NCBI RefSeq assembly: GCF_001194135.2
Contig: NC_068982.1
Location: 183,006,340 to 183,070,339, forward strand
Source of the DNA: Octopus bimaculoides
Lineage: Eukaryota
Reading direction: 5' to 3'
Length of the DNA stretch: 64,000 nucleotides
Part shown: positions 44,009-64,000 of the stretch, one piece after another
How the letters are laid out: the number at the start of each line of letters is the position of its first letter
How positions within the stretch are numbered: position 1 is the stretch's first letter
Program-made: the position numbers and the translations under genes
The notes under the pieces: generated by a model
Told to the model about the DNA's origin: nothing
Seen by the model: only the letters and a program-made list of their open reading frames with translations
Databases searched by the model: none

Positions 44009-44083
44009 GGCATATGGCGTAGCGGTTAAGAGCGCGGGCTACTAATCCCAAGATTCCGAGTTCGATTCCAGGCAGTGACCTAA

Positions 44084-44114
<31 letters not shown>

Positions 44115-45249: not shown

Positions 45250-45676
45250 TTCCAGTAATGAGAAGGGCACGTAATCCTTCACTGCACAACTTGACTTATC
45301 TGCGACTAATCCAATGGCAAGGAGGAGATCCAGGACGAATGAGGTCAGGGAGAAGATGTAGCGAACTGTCGCGTCCACGGAATGTAGTGCAACCCCTGGC
45401 TGTTAATTGGAAGGCATGGCGGTCCGTGTATGATGCTGGGTTGGAGCGATTTGAAACCAAACGCAAGAGACTGCATGAAAGGAGGAGACGTCGTCACCAA
45501 TCGCTAGCGGGTGTTTTTCGGGGTCACTTTCAGTGCTCTCATTACCAGGGGATCTGACAATCGCGTATCGGTCTTGTCGGCCACGTCCGCTCCCATGAGA
45601 AACAATGTGTGCTGGAGACAGAGTAGGATGAATGCCCTGGATCAACTATGATGGGATATCATAAGCAAGCAAGCAA
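45250..45676 (+). mobile_element. RTE-clade LINE 3' end
   Basis: LAVNWKAWRSVYDAGLERFE...HFQCSHYQGI*QSRIGLVGHVRSH matches the RTE C-terminal C..C..SRIGL..H.R.H pattern. It ends in a (GCAA)n tail. Confidence 0.8.
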
Positions 45677-45789
45677 TGTATACACACACACATACGCGCA
45701 CACACATACACATATATATATACACACGCACACATACACACATACATACACACACACACACACATACACATATACATACACATACACGT

Positions 45790-46254
45790 GAAGGTAACTT
45801 TCATCCATAGTAATGAAACCAGCAAGAAAATTCTCTTCATCGGCTTCTAAAAGTTCCAGATTGCTCGTGGACAAATTGCACCTGGTGCGGTTCTGTTCAA
45901 GAGTCAAAAGGTGAGGGACTCATCTTGCGGAAACCTTTGAGAACCCAAGTTCTTTTGTCAGCTATCTGACGGCATGTTTATGAGATGCCCAGTCTCTCGG
46001 CTATCTGACGACGTTATCATACTAAGAACAAAGTCAAGGTTATCCTTGGTGGTTGCAGTTGGAGATCTCTCTGATCTGGGATCATCTTCCACACTCTCCC
46101 TGCCACGCTTAAATTCATTAACTCAACATTTGACTGTTGCATATGAAGGAGCATTGTCTGTTAAGGTTCTCACCGTAATATCACGGATTTTTGATGGAGT
46201 CATGACTTTCAAATGAAGATACTTTATGACACCATGATACTCAGTTTTCTCCAT
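45790..46254 (-). mobile_element. Mariner transposase N-terminal fragment
   Basis: MEKTEYHGVIKYLHL...APSYATVK.*VNEFKRGRESVEDDPRSERSPT...FLAGFITMDES. Confidence 0.88.
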
Positions 46255-47212
46255 TTCCCTTGTAACCTCGACATTTGTTTATTCAAAAATCTGCAACAAC
46301 AGAAAAATTAAAATATCACAATCATGAAAATACTCCGAAAAGACTGTACTTACCTGAAAAAATTGTTTCAGCTATCTAGCAGCCCATTTTCTAGGTTAGG
46401 CTCGAAACTTTTCATACACACTTTGTAATTCAGATTTGTGAGCTGTCTTCCCATCATTTTCTTTTTCTCTTTTTTTTTTTCACATTATTGGTGTCATTTT
46501 AATTAATTAAAATTTTTGACAGACTGCACGAAGTATATTAACATCGACATAATGTCCAATTGCTATCAGTCAGCGGGACTTTTCTTTTTAACTCGTTTTT
46601 TTATACCCTAGTAACTCTATAATAACCTACAGAAGACAATTAAAAATTTTCTATTATTACATTAACGCTGGTGCGATTATTAATAATATATAAGATTTCT
46701 GTTCTAGATATTAGTTAAAATGACATGAGTGACAAGGTCATTGTATCTGAAATGAAGATTTATATTTACTGAGCCTGAAATCACAGAGAAAATGTTGACT
46801 GTTAGAAAATCATATAGAAAAAGAACCACTTTGTGGCTACATGTTCAATCATTTCAAAGTGGTGAGTAATATTTTGCTTTTACTTCAGTTCCGAAGTCGT
46901 GTCAATAAAGCGAAAATAGGTGAAAAAGTCAGATGAGCTTTCCAGATCTGAAAAAACAACTAACAATCTAACAGAACATATCGCAACCACGCAAGTATTC
47001 TTCCCTGAATTGGGGGAGACTTCACGTGAGTAAATTTAGCATTAAATTATTGACGCAAACAAAAGAAATTCAGTGACTGGTGACACAACAATTCAAAGAT
47101 AGATATTTCTTTCGAAATTAGAATTCAAAGTCGGCACTCGCTCTTGACATTGCTGTTTCGAACTTGAAGGTCATCCTTCATACTCAGTAACATCGGTTTC
47201 AATGTTTCAAGT

Positions 47213-47404
47213 CCAGCAATTTCGGGGGAGAGAGTAGGCCGATCACATCGACCCCAGTATGCAACTGGTACTTATTTTATCGATCCCGAAAGGATGAAAG
47301 GCAAAGTCGACCTCGGTGGAATTTGAACTCAGAACGTAAAGACTTACGAAATGCCGCAAAGCATTTTACCCGGCATGCTAACAATTCTGCCAGCTCGCTG
47401 CCTT
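47213..47404 (-). mobile_element. SINE family A
   Basis: Core ttatcgatcccgaaaggatgaaaggcaaagtcgacctcggtggaatttgaactcag. Confidence 0.9.
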
Positions 47405-47826
47405 AATTTCATTCTCATACACAATAATATTGCCATCTTCTATAATATTACAGACTTTAACCAACCAGCTACTGTAATATTCAATATTTTGTGTTCGATA
47501 AGGCGGCAAATAGGGCTGGAGAGGAGATGTTTGAGAGGAGACATGTTTGGAAAAAGATGGAAGAATGTCGCACGAATGTTGGGCATGAAAGGATCCGCGT
47601 GAATGTGTTATGGTTTAAAAACCCAGGTCAGTGGTAAGGCAGGGTTCATGGGGTGCGTTATAATCCCGCCTCCACTCCATCTTTTATGTCTTATTGTGTC
47701 CTATCATCCGTATCATATATATATTTTATAATTTTTAAAAGGACCCCAATCGCATTTCTTGTAAAATCATTCGATTTCATTGTGTTGTCCCTTCTATGTA
47801 TGTCCTTATGGATAATAAAAAATTAA

Positions 47827-48024
47827 GAAACGTTAGCATGCCGGGCGAAATGCTAAGCTGTATTTCGTCTGCCGTTACGTTCGGAGTTCAAATTCCGCCG
47901 AGGTCGACTTTGCCTTTCATCCTTTCGGGATCAATAAATTAAGTGCCAGTTACGCACTGGAGTCGATATAATCGACTTAATCCCTTTGTCTTTGTTTGTA
48001 CCCTCTATGTTTAGCCCCTTGTGG
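47827..48024 (+). mobile_element. SINE family A, inverted relative to the 47213 copy
   Basis: gttcaaattccgccgaggtcgactttgcctttcatcctttcggg core on the + strand. Confidence 0.9.
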
Positions 48025-48803
48025 NNNNNNNNNNNNNNNNNNNNNNNNNNNNNNNNNNNNNNNNNNNNNNNNNNNNNNNNNNNNNNNNNNNNNNNNNNNN
48101 NNNNNNNNNNNNNNNNNNNNNNNNNNNNNNNNNNNNNNNNNNNNNNNNNNNNNNNNNNNNNNNNNNNNNNNNNNNNNNNNNNNNNNNNNNNNNNNNNNNN
48201 NNNNNNNNNNNNNNNNNNNNNNNNNNNNNNNNNNNNNNNNNNNNNNNNNNNNNNNNNNNNNNNNNNNNNNNNNNNNNNNNNNNNNNNNNNNNNNNNNNNN
48301 NNNNNNNNNNNNNNNNNNNNNNNNNNNNNNNNNNNNNNNNNNNNNNNNNNNNNNNNNNNNNNNNNNNNNNNNNNNNNNNNNNNNNNNNNNNNNNNNNNNN
48401 NNNNNNNNNNNNNNNNNNNNNNNNNNNNNNNNNNNNNNNNNNNNNNNNNNNNNNNNNNNNNNNNNNNNNNNNNNNNNNNNNNNNNNNNNNNNNNNNNNNN
48501 NNNNNNNNNNNNNNNNNNNNNNNNNNNNNNNNNNNNNNNNNNNNNNNNNNNNNNNNNNNNNNNNNNNNNNNNNNNNNNNNNNNNNNNNNNNNNNNNNNNN
48601 NNNNNNNNNNNNNNNNNNNNNNNNNNNNNNNNNNNNNNNNNNNNNNNNNNNNNNNNNNNNNNNNNNNNNNNNNNNNNNNNNNNNNNNNNNNNNNNNNNNN
48701 NNNNNNNNNNNNNNNNNNNNNNNNNNNNNNNNNNNNNNNNNNNNNNNNNNNNNNNNNNNNNNNNNNNNNNNNNNNNNNNNNNNNNNNNNAAAAAAAAAAA
48801 AAA

Positions 48804-48871
<68 letters not shown>

Positions 48872-49063
48872 TAATAATAATAATAATATTAGTAATCTAT
48901 CCATCTAATAGGTATATCTATATCATGTATTTATTTTATGCAGTCGTGATGTATTCGTGTACATCATATATTCGTATAGTTGATATACCTATATCATGTA
49001 TTCATGTAGTCAGTATGGTGAACTGAACAGATGAGGACTTAAAAAGCGGACAACGTAGAAAAG

Positions 49064-49151
49064 ATGTCAAAATATTTTTTGAAATGGAAACAACGTATTC
49101 ACAATGAAAATGACGTGTCTAAAGAAGATGTCTTTCAGTTTATCGTAATAG
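49064..49151 (+). CDS. Rab gene coding exon 1 (MSKYFLKW...VFQFIVI-G)
   Basis: ATG at 49064 with an in-frame upstream stop (TAA 49040-49042). It encodes a beta1-like FQFIVIG and ends at a strong donor G|gtaagt. Phase 1 completes the P-loop Gly with exon 2. Confidence 0.85.
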
Positions 49152-49263
49152 GTAAGTATGGAAGAGAGGATCGCGGTTAGAACGATGTGTAACCTATTGA
49201 ATATTGAAATATTTCTGTTGCAAGATAAAAACATGTATATAGACACAAACACTCATACATACA

Positions 49264-49298
<35 letters not shown>

Positions 49299-52200
49299 GC
49301 ATACATATATACATATATATGCATACATATAGAACAATATAAGTATTTTGATATTGGTTCCTCGTAACTTTCTGCAAAATGCAGATTTCTAAATGAAATT
49401 TTGCAGAGACAGGTTATGCAAGGAGGAAATTATGAATAACACGATATTTCTATCTTTTCTTTTTTTTTTTTTTNNNNNNNNNNTTTTTTTTTTTTTTTTA
49501 AATGGAAAAAAAATTAAATTTAGAGTTCTAAAAACAAAAATGGAAAACAAATTTCGGGTTCTAAAAATAAAAATGCAAAAACATTTGGGGATTCTAAAAT
49601 CAAAAATGGAAAAAAATTTGGGGTTCTAAAAACAGAAATGGAAAAAACTTTGGGGGGTTCTCCACAACAATTTTACTTTTTACCAAAACTGTCTTCAAAA
49701 TACATTTGCTTCAAGGAAATTTTACTAAGATGAGATTTTGAGAACAATAAGGTACAACATAAAACAATTATATTTTAAAATTATTTCTTCTCGAAATAAT
49801 TACAAGCTACACCGTGAAAATGTAAATTAACAAAATTTTATTTAAAAATAAATATTTCAAAAAGAATCACAAGAAAGAAAAGATAAGAAGTGGAAGACTT
49901 TGAAAATCTCCAAAAATATCAATTTTTTTCCCCTTAAACTTATATCTTGAATAAGTGTGTTTGCTAAATTTCATTACGCAATATGCATTTTTAAGACAGT
50001 TGGGAGGAAACAAAGACTGTGCCAGATACATCTCAGTGGATGGGTTTATTCATAGACAAACACACACACACACTCTCAAATATATATCCACCCCTACACA
50101 CGTGCACACACACATGTAAATATGTATATATGCATACATACATACATATATATATATATATACACACACATATGTGTCTCTCTCTATATATATATATACA
50201 CACACACGTATCTGTCNNNNNNNNNNTCCATTTGTTGTTTACACCACCTGTCTTCGTCTGTTGTTTTTTTCGTGAACCCTCCCATACATACATACATACA
50301 TACATACATACATACTTTTTTTTTCTCTCCTTGTTTCTCTTCTTGTTTTTTTCTGTGTTCCTTTCTGTTGAAGAGCGTAGGCTCGAAACGTTAAAGACTT
50401 TCTCTGTTCCTGAGCGTTATACTAATACATCCATTTGTTGTTTACACCACCTGTCTTCGTCTGTTGTTTTTCGTGAATTCTCCTATACATACATACATAC
50501 ATATATACATACATAACGTCTTTAAAAGCGTCTTTTTGTAGCATGGTGTACGAGCGGGTGCTGAAAATTTCCTGGCTTTGGGTAAAAGAAAATACATGAG
50601 GATCAGTCAGTTATGATTTTATTTAACATATTCTCCTTTCAAATTCAAACACTTATTGCAGCGGTCCTTCAGTTTTTCTAAACCCTGTAAAAGAGCTCGG
50701 AAGGTTGGACCTCGAACCAGGCCTTTCGCGACATCCTTAAAGCAAGGAACTTTTCAGCACTCCCTCGTACAATGATTAATTCATCTTTGGATATTGCCCT
50801 TCAGTCAATAAATTCGAGAGGAATTTATCGTGTGTAGGTCCCTAACTTAAAAGGGTATGCTAACATAAATGTTTTAATTAGGCTCGGTTGACAACTCCGT
50901 TAACCTGCTTTACCTTAGAGGCTAGTCATCTTTCTTTGGATGGTCGTATAACTGTTTTTCGCATATTTAATATTTCCCTTTTAAAAGTCTGTAACTAACT
51001 TTATTATGCATGATTTTATTACAGGCGATGCTTCAGTCGGCAAAACAACATGGATCAATCATTTTTTCAGCGGCTATACAAGCAGGAGTTTTGCCCCGAC
51101 GGTCGGAATTGATTTTCGTTGTAAAAGAATGGTCAGTAACAAGGGAACACCTTTATAAAAGGGGTCAATGTAAATAGACTAGTGTTTTTTTTTTAATTAT
51201 TTTTTGTACACATCTTTCAAAATCATATAACCATATATAGTACTACTGACACGGTACGAATCTATCGTACTATCGACAATGTTACATGCACCTATTGGTC
51301 TATTATGATAACACACACATTATACAGTGCTTTAGATACATTACACTCTGTTGTATAACTAACACGATGTATATTATAGTCCACGTATATAGAGAGGGCT
51401 TCTCAATCACAAGAACAAATATCTACATGGGCTTCTGCTCAAATGTTCCATCATTCCTACACACATCCGGCATCGAACTTGCTATTTACCTTCGACCATA
51501 CGCTGGCGTCTTCATCATCCAAACTAGAATCCTACTAGGCCCAACCAACGTTCAGCGTAACCTTCCACATCGAATGTACACCTTCCAAAATACTGCGTAC
51601 TCTACAATACACTATAGATAGACAAGGCATGTTATTGGCTGGTTGAATGGTTTCATAAGCTCCTCCCTAGTGTCCATAACAACACTCAAACAGTTCCCGT
51701 GGTCAGTCACTTTATCATGTCTGGTCAGTCAGCGTCAACATCTTGGCTTGTCTTTTCCTAAACTATGGCTCATCTTACTTACGTAAAGGCATGGGATAAT
51801 GACTTATTTTTATTCTCTGAATCTTTGTTCTGCAAGAAAGGAATGTATGCCTCAAATTCCTACGAATCTGCTCTACCACCACAAAATTCTTACTGCCCAC
51901 GTTCGAAGCAGACTTCTCAACCATACAATCATGGCTATCGAATATATATATATATTCGATATACCCACATACCCCACCTCTACCTCCACCTCCAGCCTAA
52001 CCGACACCCCACCCGTGCTTTCCCCACTCTCGCCTCTTCACCTCCCAACACCATCACACCACACCACGCTACACCTTACCACGCAACACATCACATCACA
52101 ACACACCACCACTGACCAATTCCCATCCCCACATTTTCACACCTTCACACCTACATACACACACGCATAAGTTAAGATCACCAGCATTCTCTCACACACA

Positions 52201-54334
52201 CGCACGCACCTTTGTTTTGGGATCACTACTACTTTGTTATCTCCCCTTCTTCTTAACTCCCCTGTGTGACCCTTCTGTCCGGCATTCGCCATGATAGATC
52301 GCTGACCACTACACACATTTTTTTGTCTCCTTGTTTTTCTCCTTGTTTCTTTTTGTGTTCCTTTCTGTAGAAGAGCGTAGGACGAAACGTTAAAGACTTT
52401 CTCAATTCCCGAGCGTTATACTAATACATCTATTAATTTTCAACACCAACTGTCTTCGTCTGTTGTTTTTTTTTTGTGAATTCTCCTTATATATATGTCG
52501 AATACCACTATAAATTTAAGTTTGCTATATACCCGTGTATATAAAGAAATCTGTATAAGTGCGTGTGTATATGCGAGCGCTTCTATGAATGAGAACATGT
52601 ATTTATATGTTTATGTACTCTTGCATATATGCGAATGTGTATATCAATACAAATCTCTTTTGGTACAACAGCTTGAGTGTGTGTCTATTGGTGCATCTGA
52701 ATGCTTATATATAATGATATTTACTACAGATGACTTACCGCCATAACATTAATGGCCTCAATCGCATCTGTCTAGGAGGGCCAGCAAATTCATTTAACTA
52801 TACAATTACATTAACGTAATGTAACTCTTTGTATATCTAGATGTAATGTCACTTAACTCAGCTGAAACCTCACGGGGGTTTTGTGCGTTGCTTTAGCACA
52901 CAGAAATCCTAATAACTTACTGAGAAATTCTCATTATCTCCCCTGTTCAAATAACACTGAGAAGCATATGTGACAGAGTTGACAAAGGCCTGAAGTCGTA
53001 AGTACCATCACACACACCTACAGATGGAGTTCATTGAAACACTACATGTCACTAAAATGGTCATTGACTTTACAATGCTACAACGGCTCACTTCGGGAGA
53101 ATGCTGTATCCTGTATCCTTCATAGTTCGAGATTTTTCCTCCTTCATAAAGATCACAGAATATCGAAATACCCATTAATAGTCCAACCAAGCATCCCATC
53201 AAAGTCCCATTGTGTTCCTATTCTGTCCCATATACAAGAGGTTTTACAGATGATGAACAACTCATGTGCTTCGTTTTCATTTTACCCCAATCAATCATCT
53301 AAAAAGAAATATATCAAAGTTGAACTAAAAGGCTAGAAACATTCTCCCGGGCAATTCTTTGCAGAAATATCTATGGAGTTTTCGGGATGGCCGAAGAGAC
53401 ACTTTGCATCAATGACAATCAGTGATTCTTTTGGCCCTGTATGAGTCATTGTACGAGATCAGATCGTGTTTAGAGTTTTTTCCAAGAATATGCAAATGTA
53501 ATGTCCACTCGAGAAAGAGAATGAAGACTCGGGGAAGTAAATTCCTTATTCAATAGTGCAGTCGGTTGAGAGTCGAACAGTTCTTTTGCTGTCCGCAGTG
53601 AGATTGAATAAGCACAACAGACATTTACGTGTGTTTTATTGCATAACATGTAAATTTGTTTCATTTATGAGTGCAGTGACAGCTAAAGTTTTGGGTGAAG
53701 CCGCCGGGCACAGATTAATGTGCACTAAGTCAGACATTTCCAAGATGGCCGAAAAAATGTCGATATTGACGAACGTTTTGGGAGACCCGCAACCAGCCGA
53801 ACTGAGAAAAACATCGTAGATGTGCGTGCAGCTGTGAGGGGAAATCGTCGAATCACCATCCGTGAGTTATCAGAGGATGTGAAGATTAGTTACGGTTCAG
53901 TTCAGTTTATTTTCACTGAAGATTTGGGTATGAGATGCGTGTCTATAAAGTTTGTGCCAAAAGTGCTTTCAGCTGACACTTGGGTTTCAGTTGCACAAAA
54001 TCTCCTTGATTGTGATGAGAACGATGAAAACTTTTAGAAAACTTTGTGTAGGCCTCTGAGTAGATATCGCCAAGCTTTTGGCAAAATTTGATGCCGATTC
54101 TCTGCTCAACTTTCTCTGTCATTGTCAATGCGACGAACACACGCTACACAGGTTAATTCCAAGCACTGCTGTAAATAGCTGAAGTGAGCTAGAACGTTAA
54201 AACTTAGTACCAATGCACAACAGAGTTCAAAGTCAATCTGTGCCAAACGGCTTCACTCTGCGTTCTTTAGCTTCGTTACTTTGGTGACAGTCCGGATACT
54301 TATTGATCAGACCTCGCATGTATAATACATATAG

Positions 54335-54390
<56 letters not shown>

Positions 54391-55790
54391 CAACATATAG
54401 ACAACGCAACACAAGACTTTAAAAAAAGACTTTCACTTTGAACAATTTATGAAGGTATGCGCTTGACTAACAAATAGTTTTACTGGCAGCGTAACGACGG
54501 GTAACGACATACCGTCGTTCATTTTAGTCCCTCTCTTTTGACAACGGTTAGATTGTATAACCATGACGAGCGTTTTTGTCTCTCTCTAACGTATATAGCA
54601 AATTTATTCCGTTTACGAATGCAGAAACAGCTAAAATTTTGGCGTGTACCCCATTGTGAACTATAGTTCTCTATGTATTTTATTCACAGCTTCGTGTTCC
54701 ATATTTTTCTGAACAGCAATCTAATTGATCTGTCGTCTGTTTCATCAATCTTTTTTTTTTTTTCTGCCATCTATTTCACCTAACTTATTCTTCATCCGTC
54801 ATCTCTTTCATCAGTCATCCGTCTATGAACAATTAATTGAATACCAGCAGGAGATTGGTCACTATTTAAAATCAACTACTATAATTTTTTTGCACAAAAC
54901 AATGACAATCTTTAGTGAAAATAAAACTGTTGCTGCTATGATGATGATGATGATGATGATGATGACGACGATGACGACGATTGGTGGGGAGGAGAAAAAA
55001 TGGTGAAAGAGAAGTGTAAATAAGAGGACGAGGTGTTGATATGAAAGAGGAGATAAGGATCGTTAGTAACTGTTTTTTGTTGCTTTTTTTGTTTTTTCAC
55101 GTTGCAGAACTATAGAATCATCCAAACATTACCGAACGGACAGTCAAAGGTTTACTATCGCCAAGCATCTGTACAAATCTGGGATACGGCTGGAATGGAA
55201 AGGTGCCCCTGTTTGTATATAATTATAAACAAGTATTCATTTTATGTATATGTGAGTGTTGGTGTGTGTGTGTATGTATATCTATATATCCATATATGTG
55301 TGTTTATTACTATATATATTATATCATATTATGATGTATATATATATATATATATATTATTTTGTTTAAACAAAATAATATATTCCTCTATACACAATCA
55401 TACAAAAAAACCACCTTTTTTGTATTTATTTTTACTCGCATATATATATATATATATATANNNNNNNNNNNNNNNNNNNNNNNNNNNNNNNNNNNNNNNN
55501 NNNNNNNNNNNNNNNNNNNNNNNNNNNNNNNNNNNNNNNNNNNNNNNNNNNNNNNNNNNNNNNNNNNNNNNNNNNNNNNNNNNNNNNNNNNNNNNNNNNN
55601 NNNNNNNNNNNNNNNNNNNNNNNNNNNNNNNNNNNNNNNNNNNNNNNNNNNNNNNNNNNNNNNNNNNNNNNNNNNNNNNNNNNNNNNNNNNNNNNNNNNN
55701 NNNNNNNNNNNNNNNNNNNNNNNNNNNNNNNNNNNNNNNNNNNNNNNNNNNNNNNNNNNNNNNNNNNNNNNNNNNNNNNNNNNNNNNNNN

Positions 55791-55831
<41 letters not shown>

Positions 55832-58800
55832 ATATATTATATATATATTCGTATATATGGGGAACAATTTTTCATTCATGCATGTTTCCTTAAGTACGAC
55901 ACTATGTTCAACCCTTATCTATTTCTATATTAGATTTCTTTTCTATGTTCTTATTAGTGTTATTCAGTTGGTTAGGAACAGAAGAGTTCCTAAATCCAGA
56001 TCCGATATTTCCAGACTTTCTCTGCCTCATTGGGTATATTTTGCATTTGTATTGGTTGATTACGTGCACTTTCAGTCAAATGTTTTTTAACCCTTAACAT
56101 CATGAATCATTAGTCACATGTTGATTTGTTTGTTGCGGTTAAATGTTAACCGTTATCATTTTACTATTACATGTCGGTAGCCACGTATCAATTTTTTGTT
56201 GTATGTGTTTGCGTATTAATTTTGGCATGAGTATGATTTCAATAAAATTCTATGTGGAATTTTATAAGATATATAAATATTGCAAGTGCACGATGAGCTT
56301 ACATAACAGACTAGTACAGCATTCAACACAGACACCAAATAAATGTTATCTTGGAAATGACGCTGTGAATATCTGGAAACGTTTAATGTGGATTTAGGAA
56401 CTCTATTGTTCTGAACTAACTGTAAAAAAAACAGCTAAGAAAATACCAAAAAATACTTGAATAAAAATGATAACTTAGTCACGTATTTAATGAAACGTAT
56501 ATGTTTATATGCACATATATGCGCTTGTTTGTGTGTGTAAGTAAATATGTAAGTGTGTTGTCTTTAATTATTAATTATTTGAAGTCTTCCTGTGAGGAAG
56601 GAGTTGTTTTCTAACAAAAACCAAATCCACATTTAGAACTTAAGAAACGTCTTACATATATATGTATATATGCATGTATGTATGTACGTACGAACGTACG
56701 TACGTACGTACGTACGTATGTATGTATGTATGTATGTATGTATGTATGCATGTATGTATGTATGCATGCATGCATGCATGCATGCATGTATGTATGTATG
56801 TATGTATGTATGTATGTATGTATGTATGTATTGTAGTAGCCAAAATAGTATTTTACTAATATTTTAAAATTGCTTTATAACAATCTTCCACTTCAAGTCA
56901 ATGATGCTTCACCGCGTCTGTTAGTAGTCAGTTGTTGGCCAGTTCTCATAGACTATGATGTATATCTATGATCTAGTAACAAATATTCCACTGTATCTGC
57001 TAGAAGTCAGTAATTGGTTAGTTCTTACAGACTGGGGAGTACTGAGGCCTGACCATTAATAACTCACTTTACTGTATTTGTTTGTGTGCAGTTGTTGGTC
57101 ATTTTTCTCAACTGTTAAGTACATTGTTATTTTACTAGATCTGTTAGATCTAAGTTGTTGCTCAGTTCATTTTCTTTTTCATTTTCCGGTTTTTCATTCT
57201 TCTACCTTTTATATCTACTTTCTTTCTTGCTTTTCTCGCTTTTTCTCTCATCCTATCGCCTCACATGACATAAGACGCAACACAACTAGTGGTGCAGGAT
57301 GTGTCGAAACGATCGTTGTGTTGAATAAGGATTCTTGCTAATACCATTTTCCGTTTCCCTCATTCATTATGTGTGTATGTATGCGTGTGTATGTGTATGT
57401 GNNNNNNNNNNNNNNNNNNNNNNNNNNNNNNNNNNNNNNNNNNNNNNNNNNNNNNNNNNNNNNNNNNNNNNNNNNNNNNNNNNNNNNNNNNNNNNNNNNN
57501 NNNNNNNNNNNNNNNNNNNNNNNNNNNNNNNNNNNNNNNNNNNNNNNNNNNNNNNNNNNNNNNNNNNNNNNNNNNNNNNNNNNNNNNNNNNNNNNNNNNN
57601 NNNNNNNNNNNNNNNNNNNNNNNNNNNNNNNNNNNNNNNNNNNNNNNNNNNNNNNNNNNNNNATATAGGCCTGTGGGGTGAATGTGTGTGTGCTGTGTGT
57701 GTATGTGTTTGTTGTGTGTGTGTCTGCGTGTGTGTGTTCGCGTGCGTGTGATAGTAAGTGAGTCTGTCTAAAATTCCAGCAATGTGTTGCAGGTTTCGAT
57801 CCTTGACTTTGTCTTACTTCAGACAAGCCAGGGGTTTCCTTCTAATGGTTGATCTGACCAACGAGAATACTTTCGTCAATGCATTTGATTGGCTACAAAA
57901 GGTGGATGAATTGGCTCCTGTTACAGGCTATGATATCATTATTTTGGCCAACAAGTGTGACCTCAGGCGTTTCAAAGACGTCAACGATATAACTTTAGAA
58001 GAATTCGCTATCAAAAACAGGTTCGTCTCTTCAATTGATTCATTTCATAAATTTCTTTTCTTTTTGTTTCTCTTTTTTTTTTCTTTTGCCTTACATGTCA
58101 TGTAACCTTCTATCTTCTAAGTAGAATATCACTTTACTCAGTCGAAACGTAGCTAGAGATTTTGTGTATTGCTTCGTGACATGGAAATCCTAATACCTTG
58201 CTGAAAACATTCTCATTTTCTTCTTAACAAGTATTAGCGGCAGAGATGACGGTTGGAATTGTAAATACCATTAGACGCACCTACAGAAGGAATTGAACGA
58301 AACACTGCATGTCAATAAAACATTCGTTAACTTTACAATGCTACTGGTGCTTACAACAGAGAACTATTCTGCATTCATACTGTACTGGCTAAGACTTGGT
58401 GGATGTAAACACTATGCTGTTAGATGTCTAAATGTCATGGTGGATTTAGACACAATTCTTCCTATCTTGGTGGGCGTTCATACAGTAAAATATTTGATGC
58501 TTTGGTACATGTAGATGCAGATGAGTTAACAGTATCGTGGGCGTAGACATAGTGTAGTTAAGTGTCTTGTTGGATACAGGCTTAATACAGTTAAATGTCT
58601 TGGTACGTTGGTATATAGAAACACAATATTAATAACAGTATGTAAAACACTGACTTCTCAGATGTTTTATCGATAATCTTTCACTCGGATAAATACACGT
58701 CTTGGAGTTTTAATCATCCATGGTGTACGCTTCTTGAAATATACATTACATGGTATACAATGTATTATACTCATTACATGGTATTTATATATACGTATTC

Positions 58801-59445
58801 CATGGTATATTCTACATCACTTTATGATATGTATAATATAGTATATATTCCATGAAAATATAACTAGTCCATCTTTCTACCATTTTTACCAACATACCTC
58901 ACCTCAACCATATAATTACAGTATAAAGTGTTCTAAACTCGACTTCGATGTTTATCCCTCAGCAGCCCGAAAGTAAATATCAGTTGTATACTGTGGTTCT
59001 TTGAATCGACTCTGATCTCATTTGTAGCTCCTCAAAAACGAAAATTATTATCAATCTTTCCTCTCTTTACAGCTGTAAACCAAAATTTAGTCAGACGGAA
59101 TTATTCGATTTTTTTTATTGTATCAGAGTTATGTGTTAATTGGTTAAATGAACACGTACTTCATAAGAATTCTTTGAAAGTTGATGTAAAAGTTGTTTGA
59201 AGTTTTGCCATAAATGTTTTATTATTTATCCATGTTACTATTTCAACAGCCTGGTCTATCTTGAAACAAGTGCAGTCACTGGTAAAAATGTTACAGAAGC
59301 AATTAGACTCTTGCTACGAATGGCTGCTTACCGTAGACATTGTTCTCTTACCGATGAATGCCAGGAATTGAAAGAAAAAGACATAAAACTTGATTTCAAT
59401 AAGCTAACTCAGAATAATTCTGTTTGCAACTGCTGTACCAACTGA
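49064..59445 (+). CDS. Divergent Rab-family small GTPase, Rab27-like, 237 aa; join(49064..49151,51025..51131,55108..55202,57793..58020,59250..59445)
   Basis: Manual splicing gives a 714-nt ORF: MSKYFLKWKQRIHNENDVSKEDVFQFIVIGDASVGKTTWINHFFSGYTSRSFAPTVGIDFRCKRMNYRIIQTLPNGQSKVYYRQASVQIWDTAGMERFRSLTLSYFRQARGFLLMVDLTNENTFVNAFDWLQKVDELAPVTGYDIIILANKCDLRRFKDVNDITLEEFAIKNSLVYLETSAVTGKNVTEAIRLLLRMAAYRRHCSLTDECQELKEKDIKLDFNKLTQNNSVCNCCTN*. G1 GDASVGKT, G2 T(VGIDF), G3 DTAG, G4 NKCD and G5 ETSA are present, as are RabF-like VGIDF, RFRSLT, YFRQA and MVDLT, and C-terminal cysteines. Four GT-AG introns have phases 1,0,2,2. Confidence 0.92.
49366..50001. mobile_element. Degenerate MITE-like element with an internal ~32-bp tandem array (49495-49660)
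   Basis: Imperfect inverted ends aactttctgcaaaatgcagatttctaaatgaaattttgc and (reverse complement) aactgtcttaaaaatgcatattgcgtaatgaaatttagc. About five units of aaaaatggaaaaaaatttggggttctaaaaac lie inside. Confidence 0.5.
50228..50482 (+). mobile_element. Penelope-type terminal fragment with a short direct terminal repeat
   Basis: gaagagcgtaggctcgaaacgttaaagac motif. tccatttgttgtttacaccacctgtcttcgtctgttg occurs at both 50228 and 50430. Related copies lie at about 52320-52490 and, on the minus strand, at about 62255-62340. Confidence 0.6.
50549..50769. mobile_element. 221-bp mariner-derived MITE in Rab intron 1
   Basis: 31-bp TIRs including the TA ends (tacgagcgggtgctgaaaatttcctggcttt), 27/31 identical. 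Confidence 0.88.
51025..51131 (+). CDS. Rab gene coding exon 2 (P-loop and switch I)
   Basis: Acceptor ttttattacag|, then DASVGKTTWINHFFSGYTSRSFAPTVGIDFRCKRM, then donor ATG|gtcagt (phase 0). Confidence 0.92.
51560..52490 (+). mobile_element. Highly decayed Penelope-like element (GIY-YIG C-terminus and 3' end) in Rab intron 2
   Basis: WFHKLLPSVHNNTQTVPVVSHFIMSGQS resembles the RF.EH..SV.NN...PVA.HF...GHS pattern. A Penelope-type terminus follows at about 52320-52490. Confidence 0.45.
53685..54318. mobile_element. Mariner 5' half with an internally inverted segment, in Rab intron 2
   Basis: The TIR and MTEKVEQRIGIKFCQKLGD lie on the minus strand (54040-54318). The continuation DGRKNVDIDERFGRP...RRITIRELSEDVKISYGSVQ.I.TEDLGMR.VS.KFVPK lies on the + strand (53685-54034). 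Confidence 0.85.
55108..55202 (+). CDS. Rab gene coding exon 3 (beta2-beta3 loop and G3)
   Basis: Polypyrimidine tract plus gttgcag|, then NYRIIQTLPNGQSKVYYRQASVQIWDTAGME-R, then donor AG|gtgccc (phase 2). Confidence 0.92.
57793..58020 (+). CDS. Rab gene coding exon 4 (switch II to G4)
   Basis: Acceptor gttgcag|G completes Arg, then FRSLTLSYFRQARGFLLMVDLT...LANKCDL...EEFAIKN, then donor AG|gttcgt (phase 2). Confidence 0.93.
59250..59445 (+). CDS. Rab gene coding exon 5 (G5 and C-terminal prenylation motif)
   Basis: Acceptor tttcaacag|C, then LVYLETSAVTGKNVTEAI...VCNCCTN and a TGA stop. Confidence 0.93.
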
Positions 59446-59592
59446 AAAAGAATTATAAATATCAAGATAAACTAGATTGGTATTCTGGTTTTTACGAAGA
59501 TTCAGTTCCAGAAAAGAAAATTCATTTAATTATTTTTAAACAGTCGATAAAAAATAGATACGCCGATTTTTTCCTATTTTTTGCAGTTCATT

Positions 59593-59598
59593 AATAAA
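59593..59598 (+). promoter_or_regulatory. Candidate polyadenylation signal of the Rab gene
   Basis: AATAAA about 150 nt downstream of the stop codon. The hexamer is common in AT-rich DNA, so support is weak. Confidence 0.35.
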
Positions 59599-61429
59599 CC
59601 TAGCTATGTTAAACTCGTCTATTAACCCAGAGAATAAGATGAACTAAATTAGTAGAAAAGGAAAGGACAACAGAATCGAGTTTATAGTAACAGTGGGCCG
59701 GTTTCATTCTGTCCTTGGTATACTATAGTATATTAACAGTAGACGAGGTATTAGTGATAAGCAGCAAGAAACAAAAGTAGTCAGTAGGTGGATCTCTAAT
59801 ACGAGGTTGTCACATAAAATTACTTTTGGTTTTAGAGTGACTTGGCTTTGCATTCAGGAGTGTAAAGTGAATCAGAGATGAAGTATTCCATAGCACTTAA
59901 GTCAGTCTTACAACAAGCATTCATTTGATCAGGTCGTCCATTCTTCATAGCTTGGTGAACTGTAGTGTGATTAGATATATTGACTGAGTCAAGAACAAGA
60001 CAAAACACCTGCAGAGGTTTTGCACACATAGCCTATTGGTTATCTATTTCGTCTTCATTCCCACACAGCAGGGTACTTTTCTTTTACTTTTTGTCAAAAG
60101 GGGAAGCAGTACCTCAGTCACGTTTAGAGAGTTTCCGGCGCAATTGGAGAGGAAGTAGAACATTGTCTTCATACTGCAGTCCTGATCCGAATGCTTGGAC
60201 TATCTTAATGGTAGCTAATGTGTCATGTAGTTGTTTTAAATCCGGTGAGGGTTTCAGTCTACCACCTAAGTCGGCCATGGTAAATTTCAAACTCTAAGAG
60301 CCGAAATAAATACCGGAAGATTTTTTTTTTCTTTTTTTCTTTTTGCATTTCCACCAAATATAGATTGGTGCTTTTTATCGACTACGAATAAATGAAAGGT
60401 CACGTTGAACTAATCGAGGATTGAACTCAGAAAGATAAAAGATATTTCTTATTCCATAAAACTTAAATACATTGAACGAATTTGGGGAAATTCTGGTAAC
60501 TTTTTAAAGTCTTGCAAACTAGAATACTTTTAAAGTTTATTAATTCTTGAAATAAATATGTTGTTTGATATCTTTAGTTCCAGGCTGCTATTATATTCGA
60601 ACACAACCCAATACCTGCTCTTTTTATGGTAAGATATAAATATCAAAGTAGAAAGAAGGAGGCATCTCATTATTACTTTTAACTAATTTAATATAGTCAG
60701 ATATCGCAGCGAGTTAGTTATTCTTTTAAATTATAAATTCTACCATAATTTGGTTTCCTGAAATTCGTATGATAGGAAGACTATAGTTTTGTTATTTCTT
60801 TGTTGTATAGCATTTTCACTTTTCTTTTTTTTATTTTAATGGCATAGACAGTCGGGAAAGACCTTTGAGATTGGTGGAAGTAAGGGAGGTTATTCTCAGA
60901 CTGGAAATTTGATTTGAATGTTTGGAACAGTGAGAACTCCATTGAAGACAACCAAAGATCGAGTGATGGTGTCAAACCGGGTGACTAATTATGTCTGCCG
61001 CTCAAAAACAGCTTCGGTCTTTCTCACAAACTTCCACACAGTTTTCGTCAAATTTCGCTCACAACACTGTTATCGATCCGGTAAAAGATGGTAAAAGCCA
61101 AATGCCCAAAGTACCAGGCAGTAGTTAAGAACCCGGAACATATAGTTAAGATGAAAACCTCTTAACAAAACACCCAAGACTGTGTTAGCACGGAAAATGT
61201 CTTCCTTCAAACATTTGTGAATGAGGCAAATATGAATTAATAAACATTTCTAATGAGTAGGTAGAAGGCGGCCAAAAGATTTAAATATAGCTCCAGCACT
61301 TCACTGGCATTTCTTTCAGAGATACAGACAGAAAAACTTCGTGAAGCGACGTGCATAAATAATGCGCAACATTTTTTCTGACAAACCGTGAATTGTACTA
61401 TTCACAACAAAAACAAAAACAACAATCAT

Positions 61430-61642
61430 AATGATAGCCCTTTCTACTATAGGCACATGGCATGAAACTTTGACTGGATAGCGCTAGTCGATTCCATCGA
61501 CCCAGGTGTGCAACTGGTAAGTTATTTTATAGACCTCGAAAAGATGACAGACATAGTCAACCTCAGCAGAATTTGAACTCAGAACGAAAACTGCTGCGCA
61601 TCTTGCCAGGTGTGATAATTATTCTGCCAGCTCACCGCCTTA
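61430..61642 (-). mobile_element. SINE family A, diverged, first of a tandem pair
   Basis: tttctactataggcac tail, core, and ctgccagctcaccgcc head. Confidence 0.8.
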
Positions 61643-61649
61643 CTAATCA

Positions 61650-61857
61650 TTTTTATTATAGGCACAATGCCTGAAATTTTGATGAGGAGGATAGCCGATA
61701 ACATCGAGCCTAGTACTCAGATGGTACTTAATTTATGAACCCCAAAAGGCTGACAGGCGAAGTCGATCTCGGACGAATTTGAACTCAGAACGTAAAGACA
61801 CGAAACGTTGCTAAGCATTTTTCCCGGCGTGCTAACGTTTCTGCCAACTCACCGCCT

Positions 61858-61858
<1 letters not shown>
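61650..61858 (-). mobile_element. SINE family A, second of a tandem pair
   Basis: Same architecture directly adjacent, followed by (GAT)n. Confidence 0.85.
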
Positions 61859-61918
<60 letters not shown>

Positions 61919-62140
61919 ATATNNNNNNNNNNNNNNNNNNNNNNNNNNNNNNNNNNNNNNNNNNNNNNNNNNNNNNNNNNNNNNNNNNNNNNNNNNNNNN
62001 NNNNNNNNNNNNNNNNNNNNNNNNNNNNNNNNNNNNNNNNNNNNNNNNNNNNNNNNNNNNNNNNNNNNNNNNNNNNNNNNNNNNNNNNNNNNNNNNNNNN
62101 NNNNNNNNNNNNNNNNNNNNNNNNNNNNNNNNNNNNNNNN

Positions 62141-62229
<89 letters not shown>

Positions 62230-63714
62230 ATGTTTATATATATACATAGTTCAAGTTTATAGAAAAACAAAAGACGAAGACAAGCGTAGAAACAACAAGG
62301 AAGTGTATTGGTTTGACGCTCGGGAAAATGGAAAAATCTTTTATGTGTGTATACACACACACACACACACACACACATGCTCATTTTTCTATATACTAAT
62401 TTTATCCATCGTAGGCGCACTATTTGGGGGTGTGGTGCGGATCGAAGTGGGGCGAAGAACACAAAGGGTTAGAAAAAACTTTAAAATCATTTCTATACCC
62501 AACAATACTTTCTTTCAAAATAAGACTATTAAAAAAAATTATAGAAAAAAGAATAAAATGAACAAAATTCATTTACGAAGAAGTACAATGAAAGCTCGAG
62601 GAAACTAATGGTCAATCGGTGAAAAACACTTCATAAAACAATTAATTATCATACATTGAGAATATTCCCGAAATCCCTCTCAGTATACGATTTATGAAAA
62701 GGCTTTCGATAAATATTTTATCAAGGGAAGTAACTTTGTCAATACATGAAGTTATTTCCCATTTTTGTTTGAAATATTTATTTTCTACAACGATTGATTT
62801 TATTTTAAAAGGGCGGGGGTGGGGAGAGGTTTCTCAACATTGCAATTAAAATTCAAAATATATTTGCAAATTAAATTTATAAAAAAAAATATGTTGAACT
62901 TAATTCGTTGAAAAAATCTATGCACTTTTAAATGAATATTTTGTTATAATATCAATTTATGGAAATATCTGTTTTTTATCAACTGAAAATCTCAAAACGA
63001 GAAATGTTTTTCAAATAAAAACTTGAATTTTAAATATCCACACAAATATTGTAGCTTCACTTGAATTTAGAAAGTATAAGCAAATAACTCATGGCTCAAT
63101 TTGATATAATTAGTTTCTTTTTTACAAGATCAGGTGGCGTAACGTTCTTGGTTCAACGATGTGCTTGCAGGAAATCTACAACGATGTGGTGTCAAGTTTT
63201 AATCAAATTTTAATTAAAGTTTTAATTTCAATTTCAATTTCAAGAACTCTCTTTTCTATATAAATTATTCGGTTTGAAAACCAGGAATTACAAGCCGTAG
63301 ACAAAAAAAAGGTAAAAATTAAAAGAAAAATAAATTAAACCGAGGTAATAAAATCTTGAAAGATGCAACATAATCTATGAGAAATAAACTCCAAGTAATT
63401 ACAAGATTTCATAAGAATGGGTCTCGTCGAATCACAGTGAAATATAAACGATTCTCACAGGATAAAGCAAAACTGAGTGGAAAGCTTTACTCATGGAGAA
63501 ATTATCATCATACCGGGACATCAGACTCATGACAACTTGCAAGGGTTTCAGAAATGGATTAGTACAGAGAATGTCCGAGATTAGTACAGATAAAAGTGTC
63601 CAGATAATGTATCTAGTAAGCATAGTCAACCATGAAATTCAACTGTTAGACGGAGAATCAAAACTAGGAAAAGTGGTTAGTATGGGACCTGGAGGGAAGC
63701 ACTCTACTGAAAGG

Positions 63715-64000
63715 TGGCGGCGACAGCGGAGAAGGGGGAACAGGAGCAGGAGCAGGAGAGAGGATGAGACAAAAGAAGGGGAGCAGGAAGCGGAGAAGGA
63801 TGAAGAGGGGGTGAGAAAGGGAAGAGAAAAGAAAGAGGAGGAAAGGAAAGGAAAAGGACGAAAGGAAAGAGGGAGAGAAAAGGAAGAGGGGCAGGAGGAG
63901 GAGGAGCAGCAGGAGCAGGAGCAGGGGCAGGGGCAGGGGCAGGAGGAGCAGGGACAGGAGGAGCAGGGGCAGGAGGAGCAGGGACAGGAGGAGCAGGGGC
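63715..64000. repeat. Purine-rich tract ending in a 15-bp tandem (caggaggagcagggr)n, cut by the window end
   Basis: Nearly T-free + strand. The units repeat from about 63940 to the end. Confidence 0.85.

What the first reader, a model, noticed from the sequence alone, without database searches (positions are those of the whole stretch)
49064..59445. Highly divergent Rab27-like GTPase, mostly invisible to the ORF track
The gene is recoverable only by manual splicing of five exons, two of which are absent from the ORF track. Seen in sequence: all G-boxes, VGIDF, RFRSLT, DLTNE and a long beta2-beta3 loop. Known from Rab biology: that long loop is a Rab27 hallmark. As I recall the human RAB27A structure, introns fall after KRV (phase 0), inside the Arg of AGQER (phase 2) and just before the YFETSA strand (phase 2), and three introns here occupy those same positions. 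Much of the rest (TTWINHFFSG, NAFDWLQKVDEL) is far from Rab27 consensus. This suggests a fast-evolving lineage-specific paralogue rather than the conserved orthologue (inference). Rab27 governs secretory-granule and pigment-organelle transport, which would be relevant if this is a cephalopod.
Basis: partly seen in the sequence, partly recalled or inferred. Interest (0 to 1): 0.72.

Follow-up and report, generated by a model that had tools for sequence, protein, structure and literature searches.

The report
Divergent octopus Rab27-like GTPase gene
This is a real five-exon Octopus bimaculoides gene, already in RefSeq, for a very divergent Rab27-type membrane-traffic GTPase; it is one of a tandem pair seen only in octopods, and residues normally needed for GTP hydrolysis have been replaced.

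Summary
Five GT-AG exons on the + strand (49064-49151, 51025-51131, 55108-55202, 57793-58020, 59250-59445) give a 237-aa protein. It is 100% identical to RefSeq XP_014787369.1, "ras-related protein Rab-27B" of Octopus bimaculoides. All four assembly gaps lie in introns, and the gap-free O. vulgaris orthologue has the same five exon lengths.

Descent from Rab27 is supported. The best sequence and fold matches are Rab27A/B. The beta2-beta3 segment is long (29 residues, against 26 in Rab27 and 16 in most other Rabs). All four introns match canonical molluscan Rab27A in position and phase.

The protein is nonetheless far from canonical Rab27. G-domain identity is 41%, against 77% among canonical Rab27s, and only 6 of 21 Rab27-diagnostic residues survive.

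- The gene is already annotated.
- A tandem paralogue lies 16.9 kb downstream.
- The whole octopod clade has DTAGME (switch II Gln to Met) and a GDASVGK P-loop, which predicts impaired GTP hydrolysis.

The gene is under purifying selection (dN/dS about 0.37, p=0.015). I could not determine whether octopods also keep a canonical Rab27. Interest is modest: an uncharacterised lineage-specific Rab variant.

The parts
49064..49151 (+). Coding exon 1 (ATG at 49064; aa 1-29 plus the first base of Gly30). It ends at a GTAAGT donor, phase 1.
   Evidence: The intron sits at the same place and phase as in canonical molluscan Rab27A (L|GDSGVGK). The upstream ATG at 49031 runs into TAA after 3 codons.
49152..51024 (+). 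Intron 1. It contains the assembly gaps 49474-49483 and 50217-50226 and microsatellite-rich sequence.
   Evidence: It is about 1 kb longer than the O. vulgaris intron.
51025..51131 (+). Coding exon 2 (107 nt). It encodes the P-loop GDASVGKT (49151 plus 51025-51047) and the switch I / RabF1 motif TVGIDF (51099-51116). It ends after KRM, phase 0.
   Evidence: Exon 2 is also 107 nt in Liolophura, Patella and Pomacea Rab27A.
51132..55107 (+). Intron 2. It contains a transposase-like ORF fragment at 53729-54034.
55108..55202 (+). Coding exon 3 (95 nt). It encodes the extended beta2-beta3 hairpin NYRIIQTLPNGQSKVYYRQASVQI and the G3 motif WDTAGME. The Met95 codon, ATG at 55195-55197, replaces the switch II Gln. 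The exon ends inside the Arg97 codon, phase 2.
   Evidence: The same intron position and phase occur in fish and molluscan Rab27A.
55203..57792 (+). Intron 3. It contains the assembly gaps 55461-55790 and 57402-57662.
   Evidence: It is collinear with gap-free O. vulgaris sequence on both sides of each gap.
57793..58020 (+). Coding exon 4 (228 nt). It encodes RFRSLT (RabF3), YFRQA, LMVDLTNE and the G4 motif NKCD (57950-57961). It ends in phase 2.
   Evidence: The corresponding exon is also 228 nt in canonical molluscan Rab27A.
58021..59249 (+). Intron 4.
59250..59445 (+). Coding exon 5. It encodes the G5 motif ETSA (59263-59274), the hypervariable tail, the C-terminal Cys cluster CNCCTN (59425-59442) and the TGA stop (59443-59445).

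Best explanation
The locus is a functional protein-coding gene of Octopus bimaculoides, called 'gene A' here (RefSeq Rab-27B, XP_014787369.1). It encodes a small GTPase that descends from the molluscan Rab27 gene.

Shown:
- It is the upstream member of a same-strand tandem pair. Gene B starts 16.9 kb downstream, outside the window.
- The pair was found only in octopods (Octopus bimaculoides, O. vulgaris and O. sinensis; Argonauta hians has a B-type gene).
- Both copies keep the Rab27 exon plan and the long beta2-beta3 hairpin. Both have diverged far from canonical Rab27, and A is the less constrained copy.

Inferred mechanism: the protein still binds guanine nucleotide and Mg2+, because the P-loop Lys/Thr, the switch I Thr, DTAG, NKCD and ETSA are all intact. 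Its C-terminal cysteines (CNCCTN) should be geranylgeranylated, anchoring it to a membrane. The switch II glutamine is Met (DTAGME). The P-loop is GDASVGKT, with Ser at the Ras Gly13-equivalent position. For these reasons intrinsic GTP hydrolysis, and perhaps GAP-stimulated hydrolysis, should be slow. Activation by DENN-type exchange factors may also be altered. The protein would then act as a long-lived, mostly GTP-bound membrane tag rather than a fast switch. Because 15 of 21 Rab27-diagnostic residues are replaced, its effectors probably differ from the classical Rab27 set.
For: Gene model:
- Clean GT-AG splicing gives a product identical to RefSeq and UniProt entries.
- The O. vulgaris orthologue is intact, gap-free, and has the same exon lengths.

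Selection (O. bimaculoides vs O. vulgaris):
- The CDS differs at 3.8% of sites, against roughly 8-11% for most aligned non-coding blocks (6-16% overall).
- Gene A has Nd=16 over 563 sites and Sd=11 over 148 sites, dN/dS about 0.37, Fisher p=0.015.
- Gene B has dN/dS about 0.16, p=0.0002.

Rab27 descent:
- PDB sequence search: Rab27B/A score 116-141 bits; the next family, Rab1, scores 103.
- Apart from one two-domain rotifer model (Adineta, P0005), every named non-octopod hit among the 120 listed is a Rab27.
- The AF2 model has G-domain pLDDT mostly above 90. Its top 15 Foldseek matches are all Rab27A/B, at rmsd about 2.5-3.8 A; Rab1 and Rab8 give 3.4-4.8 A.
- The beta2-beta3 segment is 29 residues. 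Canonical Rab27 has 26, and 34 of 40 other Rabs have 16.
- All four introns match Liolophura, Patella and Pomacea Rab27A in position and phase, and exons 2 and 4 match in length (107 and 228 nt).

Tandem pair: O. vulgaris L002 carries A at 10001-19856 and B at 36044-52623, with the same internal exon lengths (107/95/228). O. bimaculoides B lies on the same chromosome and strand.

Clade signature: every A and B sequence has GDASVGK(T/S) and DTAGME.

Restriction to octopods: an exhaustive profile search of 1.84 billion representatives found nothing between the octopod proteins (431-488 bits) and canonical Rab27 (about 190 bits per domain).

Consequences of losing the switch II Gln: in Rabs, mutating it lowers basal hydrolysis (Rab5) or GAP-stimulated hydrolysis (Rab1, Rab35). 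It can also block DENN-GEF activation (Langemeyer et al. 2014, PMC3919270).
Against: - Phylogenetic support for the Rab27 link is moderate. 'Octopod + canonical Rab27' gets 66% NJ bootstrap, and the clade falls outside all canonical Rab27s (99.8%) rather than among molluscs.
- Only 6 of 21 Rab27-diagnostic residues are kept. Non-Rab27 Rabs keep at most 4.
- G-domain identity is 41% to Rab27 and 37% to the best non-Rab27 Rab.
- I examined no transcript or junction data. The protein's listed sources include no Logan run assemblies, so expression may be low or restricted.
- dN/dS of about 0.37 is relaxed for a Rab.
- The biochemical consequences of Met95 and Ser33 are inferred, not measured.
- No A-type copy lies within 10 kb of the Argonauta B gene, so the age of the duplication is uncertain.
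Confidence: 0.65

Rival explanations
1. Octopods have no canonical Rab27. The divergent A/B pair is then the orthologue lineage itself (accelerated evolution followed by tandem duplication), not an extra paralogue next to a conserved Rab27.
For: - The exon plan is identical to molluscan Rab27A.
- No octopod sequence appeared among the 120 best hits to a canonical protostome Rab27, whereas about 16 other molluscan species did.
- RefSeq names both genes Rab-27A/B(-like).
Against: - The top-120 display limit hides more than 1000 further hits. I saw no oyster or scallop sequence among the 120 listed, so absence from that list cannot count as absence of the gene.
- Canonical Rab27 is at least 65% identical from cnidarians to mammals, so loss would be unusual.
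- No synteny evidence either way.
Confidence: 0.2
2. The gene belongs to another Rab lineage, or to an ancient separate one (Rab3, Rab26/37, Rab8/10, Rab44-like, or a lost bilaterian Rab). Its resemblance to Rab27 would then be superficial.
For: - It lies outside the canonical Rab27 clade in the NJ tree, and the link to that clade has only 66% support.
- 15 of 21 Rab27 signature residues are absent.
- Its identity margin over other Rabs is small (41% vs 37%).
Against: - In 500 bootstraps it never grouped with the Rab3 representative (P0398, identified) and grouped with the Rab26 representative (P0351) only 9 times.
- The best PDB sequence and fold matches are all Rab27.
- It has a Rab27-length hairpin.
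- Its exon plan is identical to Rab27A.
- No non-octopod relative is closer than Rab27 among 1.84 billion representatives.
Confidence: 0.1
3. It is a decaying or non-functional duplicate (a transcribed pseudogene) that gene predictors model only because its reading frame happens to be open.
For: - Constraint is relaxed (dN/dS 0.37-0.50).
- The catalytic Gln and canonical P-loop are lost.
- The protein's listed sources include no run-assembly (Logan) source.
Against: - The ORF and all eight splice sites are intact in O. bimaculoides and O. vulgaris, and the O. sinensis RefSeq protein has the same sequence after an 11-residue N-terminal extension.
- Nonsynonymous changes are significantly under-represented (p=0.015).
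- Exons are more conserved than introns.
- The nucleotide-binding motifs are kept, and the same Gln-to-Met change is kept in the better-conserved paralogue B and in Argonauta.
- The fold prediction is confident.
Confidence: 0.05

Closest known systems
Canonical metazoan Rab27 (Rab27A/Rab27B; molluscan Rab27A such as Liolophura sinensis, Patella caerulea and Pomacea canaliculata)
   Same: - Ras-family G domain; VGIDF and RFRSLT motifs.
- Long beta2-beta3 hairpin.
- Identical positions and phases for four introns, and exon lengths of 107 and 228 nt.
- Best sequence and fold match.
- C-terminal cysteines suitable for prenylation.
   Different: - Only about 41% G-domain identity, against at least 65% among canonical Rab27s.
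- 15 of 21 diagnostic residues replaced.
- GDASVGKT instead of GDSGVGKT, and DTAGME instead of DTAGQE.
- Hairpin 3 residues longer.
- Tail ends in CNCCTN, not CXC.
- Found only in octopods, as a tandem pair.
Laboratory 'constitutively active' switch II mutants such as Rab27A/B Q78L (e.g. the mouse Rab27B chains of PDB 2ZET and 2IF0, which show DTAGLE)
   Same: The switch II Gln is replaced by a hydrophobic residue in an otherwise Rab27-like fold. The expected effect is slower GTP hydrolysis.
   Different: Here the change is natural, is Met rather than Leu, is conserved across species and paralogues, and comes with a P-loop change. Its effect has not been measured. Langemeyer et al. 2014 warn that such mutants can also resist GEFs.
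Octopod gene B (O. sinensis XP_036369962.1; O. bimaculoides XP_014787372.1; Argonauta hians GAB1604771.1)
   Same: Same five-exon plan, same GDASVGK and DTAGME, same 29-residue hairpin. It is the adjacent gene on the same strand.
   Different: - 52% G-domain identity to A.
- B is more conserved: 76% between Octopus and Argonauta, and dN/dS about 0.16.
- Different N-terminus, and a different tail ending (CSCI or CTPCS).
Rab3 and Rab26/37 (the neighbouring exocytic Rab subfamilies)
   Same: Same Rab supergroup, with RFRS/T-type switch II; both are regulated-secretion Rabs.
   Different: They lack the long beta2-beta3 hairpin (16 residues). They score lower in every comparison and grouped with the octopod clade in 0 and 9 of 500 bootstraps respectively.

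Membership tests
Rab small GTPases (Ras superfamily) | Ras-type G domain with G1-G5 nucleotide-binding motifs | tested here: met
   Pfam PF00071, E=1.9e-36. GxxxxGKT, switch I Thr55, DTAG, NKCD and ETSA are all present. The AF2 G domain has pLDDT mostly above 90.
Rab small GTPases (Ras superfamily) | C-terminal cysteine motif for geranylgeranylation | tested here: met
   The tail ends in CNCCTN, a double-Cys, CCXX-type motif. That this class is a RabGGTase substrate is established knowledge. Prenylation itself was not tested.
Rab27 subfamily | Best and reciprocal similarity to Rab27 over all other Rabs | tested here: met
   PDB: Rab27B/A 116-141 bits against at most 103 for the other families. 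The top 15 Foldseek hits are Rab27. Apart from one rotifer two-domain model, the named non-octopod hits are all Rab27. In the reverse direction, A's best representatives are Rab27-type.
Rab27 subfamily | Extended beta2-beta3 hairpin (about 10 extra residues) | tested here: met
   29 residues between G[IV]DF and WDTAG. Canonical Rab27 has a median of 26, and 34 of 40 other Rabs have 16. The AF2 model has strands at 59-72 and 78-91.
Rab27 subfamily | Gene structure shared with Rab27 genes | tested here: met
   All four introns match three molluscan Rab27A genes in position and phase. Three of the four match fish Rab27A. How specific these positions are relative to other Rab subfamilies was not tested.
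Rab27 subfamily | Monophyly with canonical Rab27 in a phylogeny | tested here: inconclusive
   NJ, 175 columns, 500 bootstraps: octopod + Rab27 66%; canonical Rab27 excluding the octopod clade 99.8%. Long-branch effects are likely. No ML program was available.
Rab27 subfamily | Rab27-specific (subfamily signature) residues | tested here: not met
   6 of 21 data-derived diagnostic positions are retained. Non-Rab27 Rabs have a median of 1 and a maximum of 4. E of FREKR, D of FFRDA, R of NxRNW and AY..NP are all replaced in A.
Rab27 subfamily | Canonical catalytic and P-loop residues (GDSGVGKT, DTAGQE) | tested here: not met
   GDASVGKT and DTAGME, conserved in every A and B sequence.
Rab27 subfamily | C-terminal CXC motif | tested here: not met
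   A ends in CNCCTN and B in CSCI or CTPCS. Canonical molluscan Rab27A ends in CAC or CLC.
Rab27 subfamily | GTP-dependent binding of Rab27 effectors (Slp/Slac2/Munc13-4) and regulation by the Rab27 GEF and GAPs | not testable with these tools
   Needs biochemistry. The substitutions in switch II and the signature positions suggest altered specificity (inference).
Rab27 subfamily | One-to-one orthology or synteny with the Rab27 locus of other molluscs | tested here: inconclusive
   tblastx of the flanks (10 kb or less) of the Liolophura, Patella and Pomacea Rab27A loci against the octopus loci and the window gave no hits. The flanks are too short for these genome sizes.

The most novel reading that the evidence does not exclude
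Octopods have lost the canonical Rab27 that is otherwise conserved from cnidarians to mammals. They rely instead on a tandem pair of rapidly evolved Rab27 descendants that lack the switch II glutamine. That would mean regulated exocytosis and lysosome-related-organelle transport in octopods (ink, chromatophore pigment granules, secretory glands) run on a rewired, slowly cycling Rab27 module.
Probability: 0.15. Interest if true: 0.55.

Novelty: new variant of a known kind. Interest (0 to 1): 0.3.

Why it matters
Rab27 is among the most conserved regulators of secretory-granule and lysosome-related-organelle exocytosis. Here a natural, selectively maintained Rab27 descendant has lost both the switch II glutamine and the canonical P-loop. 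It is duplicated in tandem and confined to octopods.

This offers a natural experiment on how far a Rab can drift while keeping its fold. It also bears on whether a 'GTP-locked' Rab can be a normal cellular component.

Practically, the automated name 'Rab-27B' overstates equivalence with vertebrate Rab27B, and users of octopus annotations should know that. Two neighbouring public gene models are also wrong: a fused A+B model in O. vulgaris, and a B model without its P-loop in O. bimaculoides.

Lineage-specific Rab paralogues and Rabs without this glutamine are both known phenomena, so the finding is incremental.

Tried and rejected
- Search for a canonical octopus Rab27. A word-indexed search with a canonical protostome Rab27 (P0016) returned 1144 strong hits, of which only 120 are shown. 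About 16 molluscan species appeared and no cephalopod. I saw no oyster or scallop among them either, so this says nothing about absence.
- Synteny. tblastx of the flanks of the Liolophura, Patella and Pomacea Rab27A loci against the window and the octopus loci gave no hits. The only octopus neighbour seen is a SASH1-like gene downstream of B in O. vulgaris. The only Pomacea neighbour seen is a clathrin-adaptor sigma subunit.
- A second Rab gene in the window. tblastn of A, B and canonical Rab27 against all 64 kb found only the five exons.
- Search with gene B. It returned only octopod relatives plus unrelated Rabs pulled in by the shared word AGMER, which is a bias of the word index.
- Pfam scan of ten other long ORFs in the window. 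Nothing above threshold.
- Literature searches for Rab27 with octopus or cephalopod. Nothing relevant.
- Gene look-ups for Hydractinia, Daphnia and Owenia Rab27. Not on record.
- First tree test. It 'failed' only because unnamed Rab27-type representatives sat inside the clade. I redid it with those removed.

Full report
**What is there**

The window is AT-rich (GC about 0.2-0.4), full of microsatellites and has 17 assembly gaps. Between 49064 and 59445 on the + strand, five reading-frame segments join through canonical AG|exon|GT boundaries into a 714-nt CDS. The exons are 49064-49151, 51025-51131, 55108-55202, 57793-58020 and 59250-59445, with intron phases 1, 0, 2, 2. The 237-aa product is:

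MSKYFLKWKQRIHNENDVSKEDVFQFIVIGDASVGKTTWINHFFSGYTSRSFAPTVGIDFRCKRMNYRIIQTLPNGQSKVYYRQASVQIWDTAGMERFRSLTLSYFRQARGFLLMVDLTNENTFVNAFDWLQKVDELAPVTGYDIIILANKCDLRRFKDVNDITLEEFAIKNSLVYLETSAVTGKNVTEAIRLLLRMAAYRRHCSLTDECQELKEKDIKLDFNKLTQNNSVCNCCTN

It matches Pfam Ras at E=1.9e-36.

**Already annotated**

The product is 100% identical over its full length to 'ras-related protein Rab-27B [Octopus bimaculoides]' (XP_014787369.1/70.1/71.1; UniProt A0A0L8FSB4). The annotated gene spans CM046602.1:183,055,403-183,065,784. That is 10,382 bp, exactly the finding's coordinates. The window is therefore from O. bimaculoides, and the gene model is public. Being 'invisible to the ORF track' is just the normal result of splicing.

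**Assembly gaps**

The four gaps flagged by the scan program lie in intron 1 (49474-49483 and 50217-50226) and intron 3 (55461-55790 and 57402-57662). None touches an exon. The O. vulgaris orthologous locus (L002) has no N at all. It carries an intact gene with the same exon lengths (88/107/95/228/196). Its sequence aligns collinearly on both sides of each gap; for example, the 261-N gap corresponds to about 242 bp in O. vulgaris. No exon is hidden, and the frame across every junction is confirmed.

**Is it Rab27-like?**

Several independent lines say yes by descent:
- PDB sequence search: all Rab27A/B chains come first (116-141 bits, E down to 6e-40). The next family, Rab1, reaches 103 bits and Rab8 reaches 99.
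- Apart from one two-domain rotifer model (Adineta, P0005), all named non-octopod proteins among the best 120 database hits are Rab27A/B, at 33-43% identity.
- An AlphaFold2 model has mean pLDDT 81, with the G domain mostly above 90. Its 15 best Foldseek matches are Rab27A/B, at rmsd about 2.5-3.8 A. Rab1 and Rab8 give 3.4-4.8 A, because the long beta2-beta3 hairpin fits only Rab27.
- The segment between G[IV]DF and WDTAG is 29 residues in the octopod proteins. Canonical Rab27 has 26 (range 21-27), and 34 of 40 other Rabs have 16.
- Gene structure. Exact spliced alignment shows that canonical Rab27A of a chiton (Liolophura), a limpet (Patella) and an apple snail (Pomacea) each have introns at L|GDSGVGK (phase 1), EKRV| (phase 0), AGQE|R (phase 2) and just before the ..Y[FY]ETSA strand (phase 2). 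Their internal exons are 107, 86 and 228 nt. The octopus gene has the same four positions and phases, with exons of 107, 95 and 228 nt. It lacks the phase-1 intron and has one extra.

**How divergent is it?**

- Over 175 G-domain columns, gene A is 41% identical to canonical Rab27 (39-43%). Canonical Rab27s from cnidarians to mammals average 77% (minimum 65%). The best non-Rab27 Rab is 37% identical to A.
- I defined 21 Rab27-diagnostic columns: residue at least 90% conserved in 31 canonical Rab27s and at most 15% frequent in 55 other Rabs. The octopod proteins keep 6 of them. Other Rabs keep a median of 1 and at most 4.
- In NJ trees the octopod clade is solid (99%). It joins canonical Rab27 in 66% of 500 bootstraps. 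It sits outside the canonical clade, which is monophyletic in 99.8% of bootstraps.
- It never joins the Rab3 representative (identified). It joins the Rab26 representative in only 9 of 500 bootstraps.
- A position outside all animal Rab27s, for a clade seen only in octopods, most likely reflects long-branch behaviour. The shared molluscan exon plan points to a derived origin. This is inference.

**A tandem pair restricted to octopods**

The O. vulgaris annotation CAI9718309.1 (360 aa) fuses two genes. The locus L002 in fact holds gene A (10001-19856) and a second five-exon gene B (36044-52623). B has the same phases and the same internal exon lengths.

In O. bimaculoides, B (XP_014787372.1) starts 16.9 kb downstream of A's stop on the same strand, beyond the window. 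Argonauta hians has a B-type gene with the same structure, and no A-type copy within 10 kb.

Searches with A, with B, and an exhaustive profile search of 1.84 billion representatives all agree. Nothing lies between the octopod proteins (431-488 bits) and canonical Rab27 (about 190 bits per domain). Squid, cuttlefish and Nautilus proteomes may be poorly represented, so 'octopod-only' is provisional.

All A and B proteins have GDASVGK(T/S) instead of GDSGVGKT. By alignment to Ras, that is Ala at the position-12 equivalent and Ser at the Gly13 equivalent. All also have DTAGME instead of DTAGQE; in the window Met95 is ATG at 55195-55197. The other nucleotide-binding elements are intact (Lys36/Thr37, Thr55, Asp91, NKCD, ETSA).

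In Rabs, mutating the switch II glutamine lowers basal hydrolysis (Rab5) or GAP-stimulated hydrolysis (Rab1, Rab35). It can also block DENN-type GEF activation (Langemeyer et al. 2014, PMC3919270). In TBC-GAP complexes the GAP supplies the catalytic glutamine in trans (Pan et al. 2006, as cited there). I therefore infer a slowly cycling, mostly GTP-bound protein. This has not been measured.

DTAGME also occurs in scattered unrelated Rabs, so the substitution is not unique in nature.

**Functional or decaying?**

- Between O. bimaculoides and O. vulgaris, A's CDS differs at 27 of 714 nt (15 amino acids). Most aligned non-coding blocks are roughly 8-11% divergent, with a range of 6-16%.
- Nei-Gojobori counts are Nd=16 over 563 sites and Sd=11 over 148 sites. 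That gives dN/dS of about 0.37 and Fisher p=0.015. For B exons 3-5, dN/dS is about 0.16 and p=0.0002.
- All splice sites and the ORF are intact in O. bimaculoides and O. vulgaris. The O. sinensis RefSeq protein XP_029651694.2 matches O. vulgaris A apart from an 11-residue N-terminal extension. That extension is closed by a stop codon in O. bimaculoides.

A is therefore under purifying selection, though it is the less constrained copy. I could not check RNA-seq junctions. None of the listed sources for the protein is a run assembly.

**Open question**

I could not establish whether octopods also keep a canonical Rab27. A search with a canonical protostome Rab27 listed about 16 molluscan species and no cephalopod, but only 120 of 1144 hits are displayed. 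Flank comparisons gave no synteny signal. Literature searches found nothing on cephalopod Rab27 paralogues.

**Verdict**

The gene is Rab27-derived, highly divergent and lineage-restricted, but 'paralogue rather than orthologue' is untested, and no data support the pigment or ink link.

The gene model is already public. What appears undescribed is the character of the clade: a tandem pair, loss of the switch II Gln, an altered P-loop, and loss of most Rab27 signature residues. That makes it a new variant of a known kind, of modest interest.

Noticed in passing
Outside the window: about 16.9 kb downstream of 59445 (L007 10001-20325; CM046602.1:183,082,674-183,092,998): The tandem paralogue 'gene B' (XP_014787372.1, 228 aa) is mis-modelled in O. 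bimaculoides. The exon 1 found by tblastn (L007 8991-9155) is not used. The P-loop exon was not found by tblastn and probably lies in the assembly gap L007 12855-13450. The RefSeq model substitutes an unrelated, possibly transposase-derived first exon (my reading; not searched) and a 25-nt mini-exon.
   Followed up: partly
L002 (O. vulgaris OX597815.1:143,257,148-143,321,814), 10001-54667: The O. vulgaris annotation CAI9718309.1 (360 aa) fuses exons 1-4 of gene A with exons 2-4 of gene B. Both genes are separately intact five-exon genes in that gap-free sequence.
   Followed up: yes
window 53729-54034 (+), inside intron 2: A 102-codon open frame (…RAAVRGNRRITIRELSEDVKISYGSVQFIFTEDLGMRCVSIKFVPKVL…) looks to me like the N-terminal HTH region of a mariner-type transposase. 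Pfam gives only a sub-threshold HTH_41 match (E=0.007).
   Followed up: partly
window 4953-5261 (+), 7749-8243 (-), 34187-34537 (-), 39678-39977 (-): A dispersed repeat whose translation carries the recurring string …RLNPEPCGWE..FLP.SH.C.YDY…. It is presumably a SINE or another interspersed element common in this genome. It has no Pfam match.
   Followed up: partly
window 49314-50485 vs L002 10256-10429: Intron 1 is about 1 kb longer in O. bimaculoides than in O. vulgaris. The extra stretch is microsatellite-rich and contains the two 10-N gaps, so it may be a repeat insertion or a scaffolding join.
   Followed up: no
window 49031-49063: An upstream in-frame ATG is followed by TAA after three codons in O. 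bimaculoides. The O. sinensis RefSeq model (XP_029651694.2) uses the equivalent ATG for an 11-residue extension. The conserved start is therefore probably the ATG at 49064.
   Followed up: partly
proteins P0130, P0132, P0134, P0137, P0140, P0142, P0144, P0149-P0152, P0161, P0162, P0406: DTAGME (Met at the switch II Gln position) recurs in unrelated small GTPases from nematodes, mites, Tritrichomonas, a fungus (Pisolithus) and unnamed environmental sequences. The substitution has therefore arisen repeatedly. Most of these hits were pulled in by the word-index bias for 'AGMER'.
   Followed up: no
window 1-49000 and 59500-64000: No other convincing coding exons were seen. Long ORFs are mostly translated microsatellites (CA/TG, TATG/CATA, poly-A/T runs), and ten tested ORFs had no Pfam family. 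A Glu/Lys/Arg-rich open frame runs off the window end at 63466-63999 (+).
   Followed up: partly
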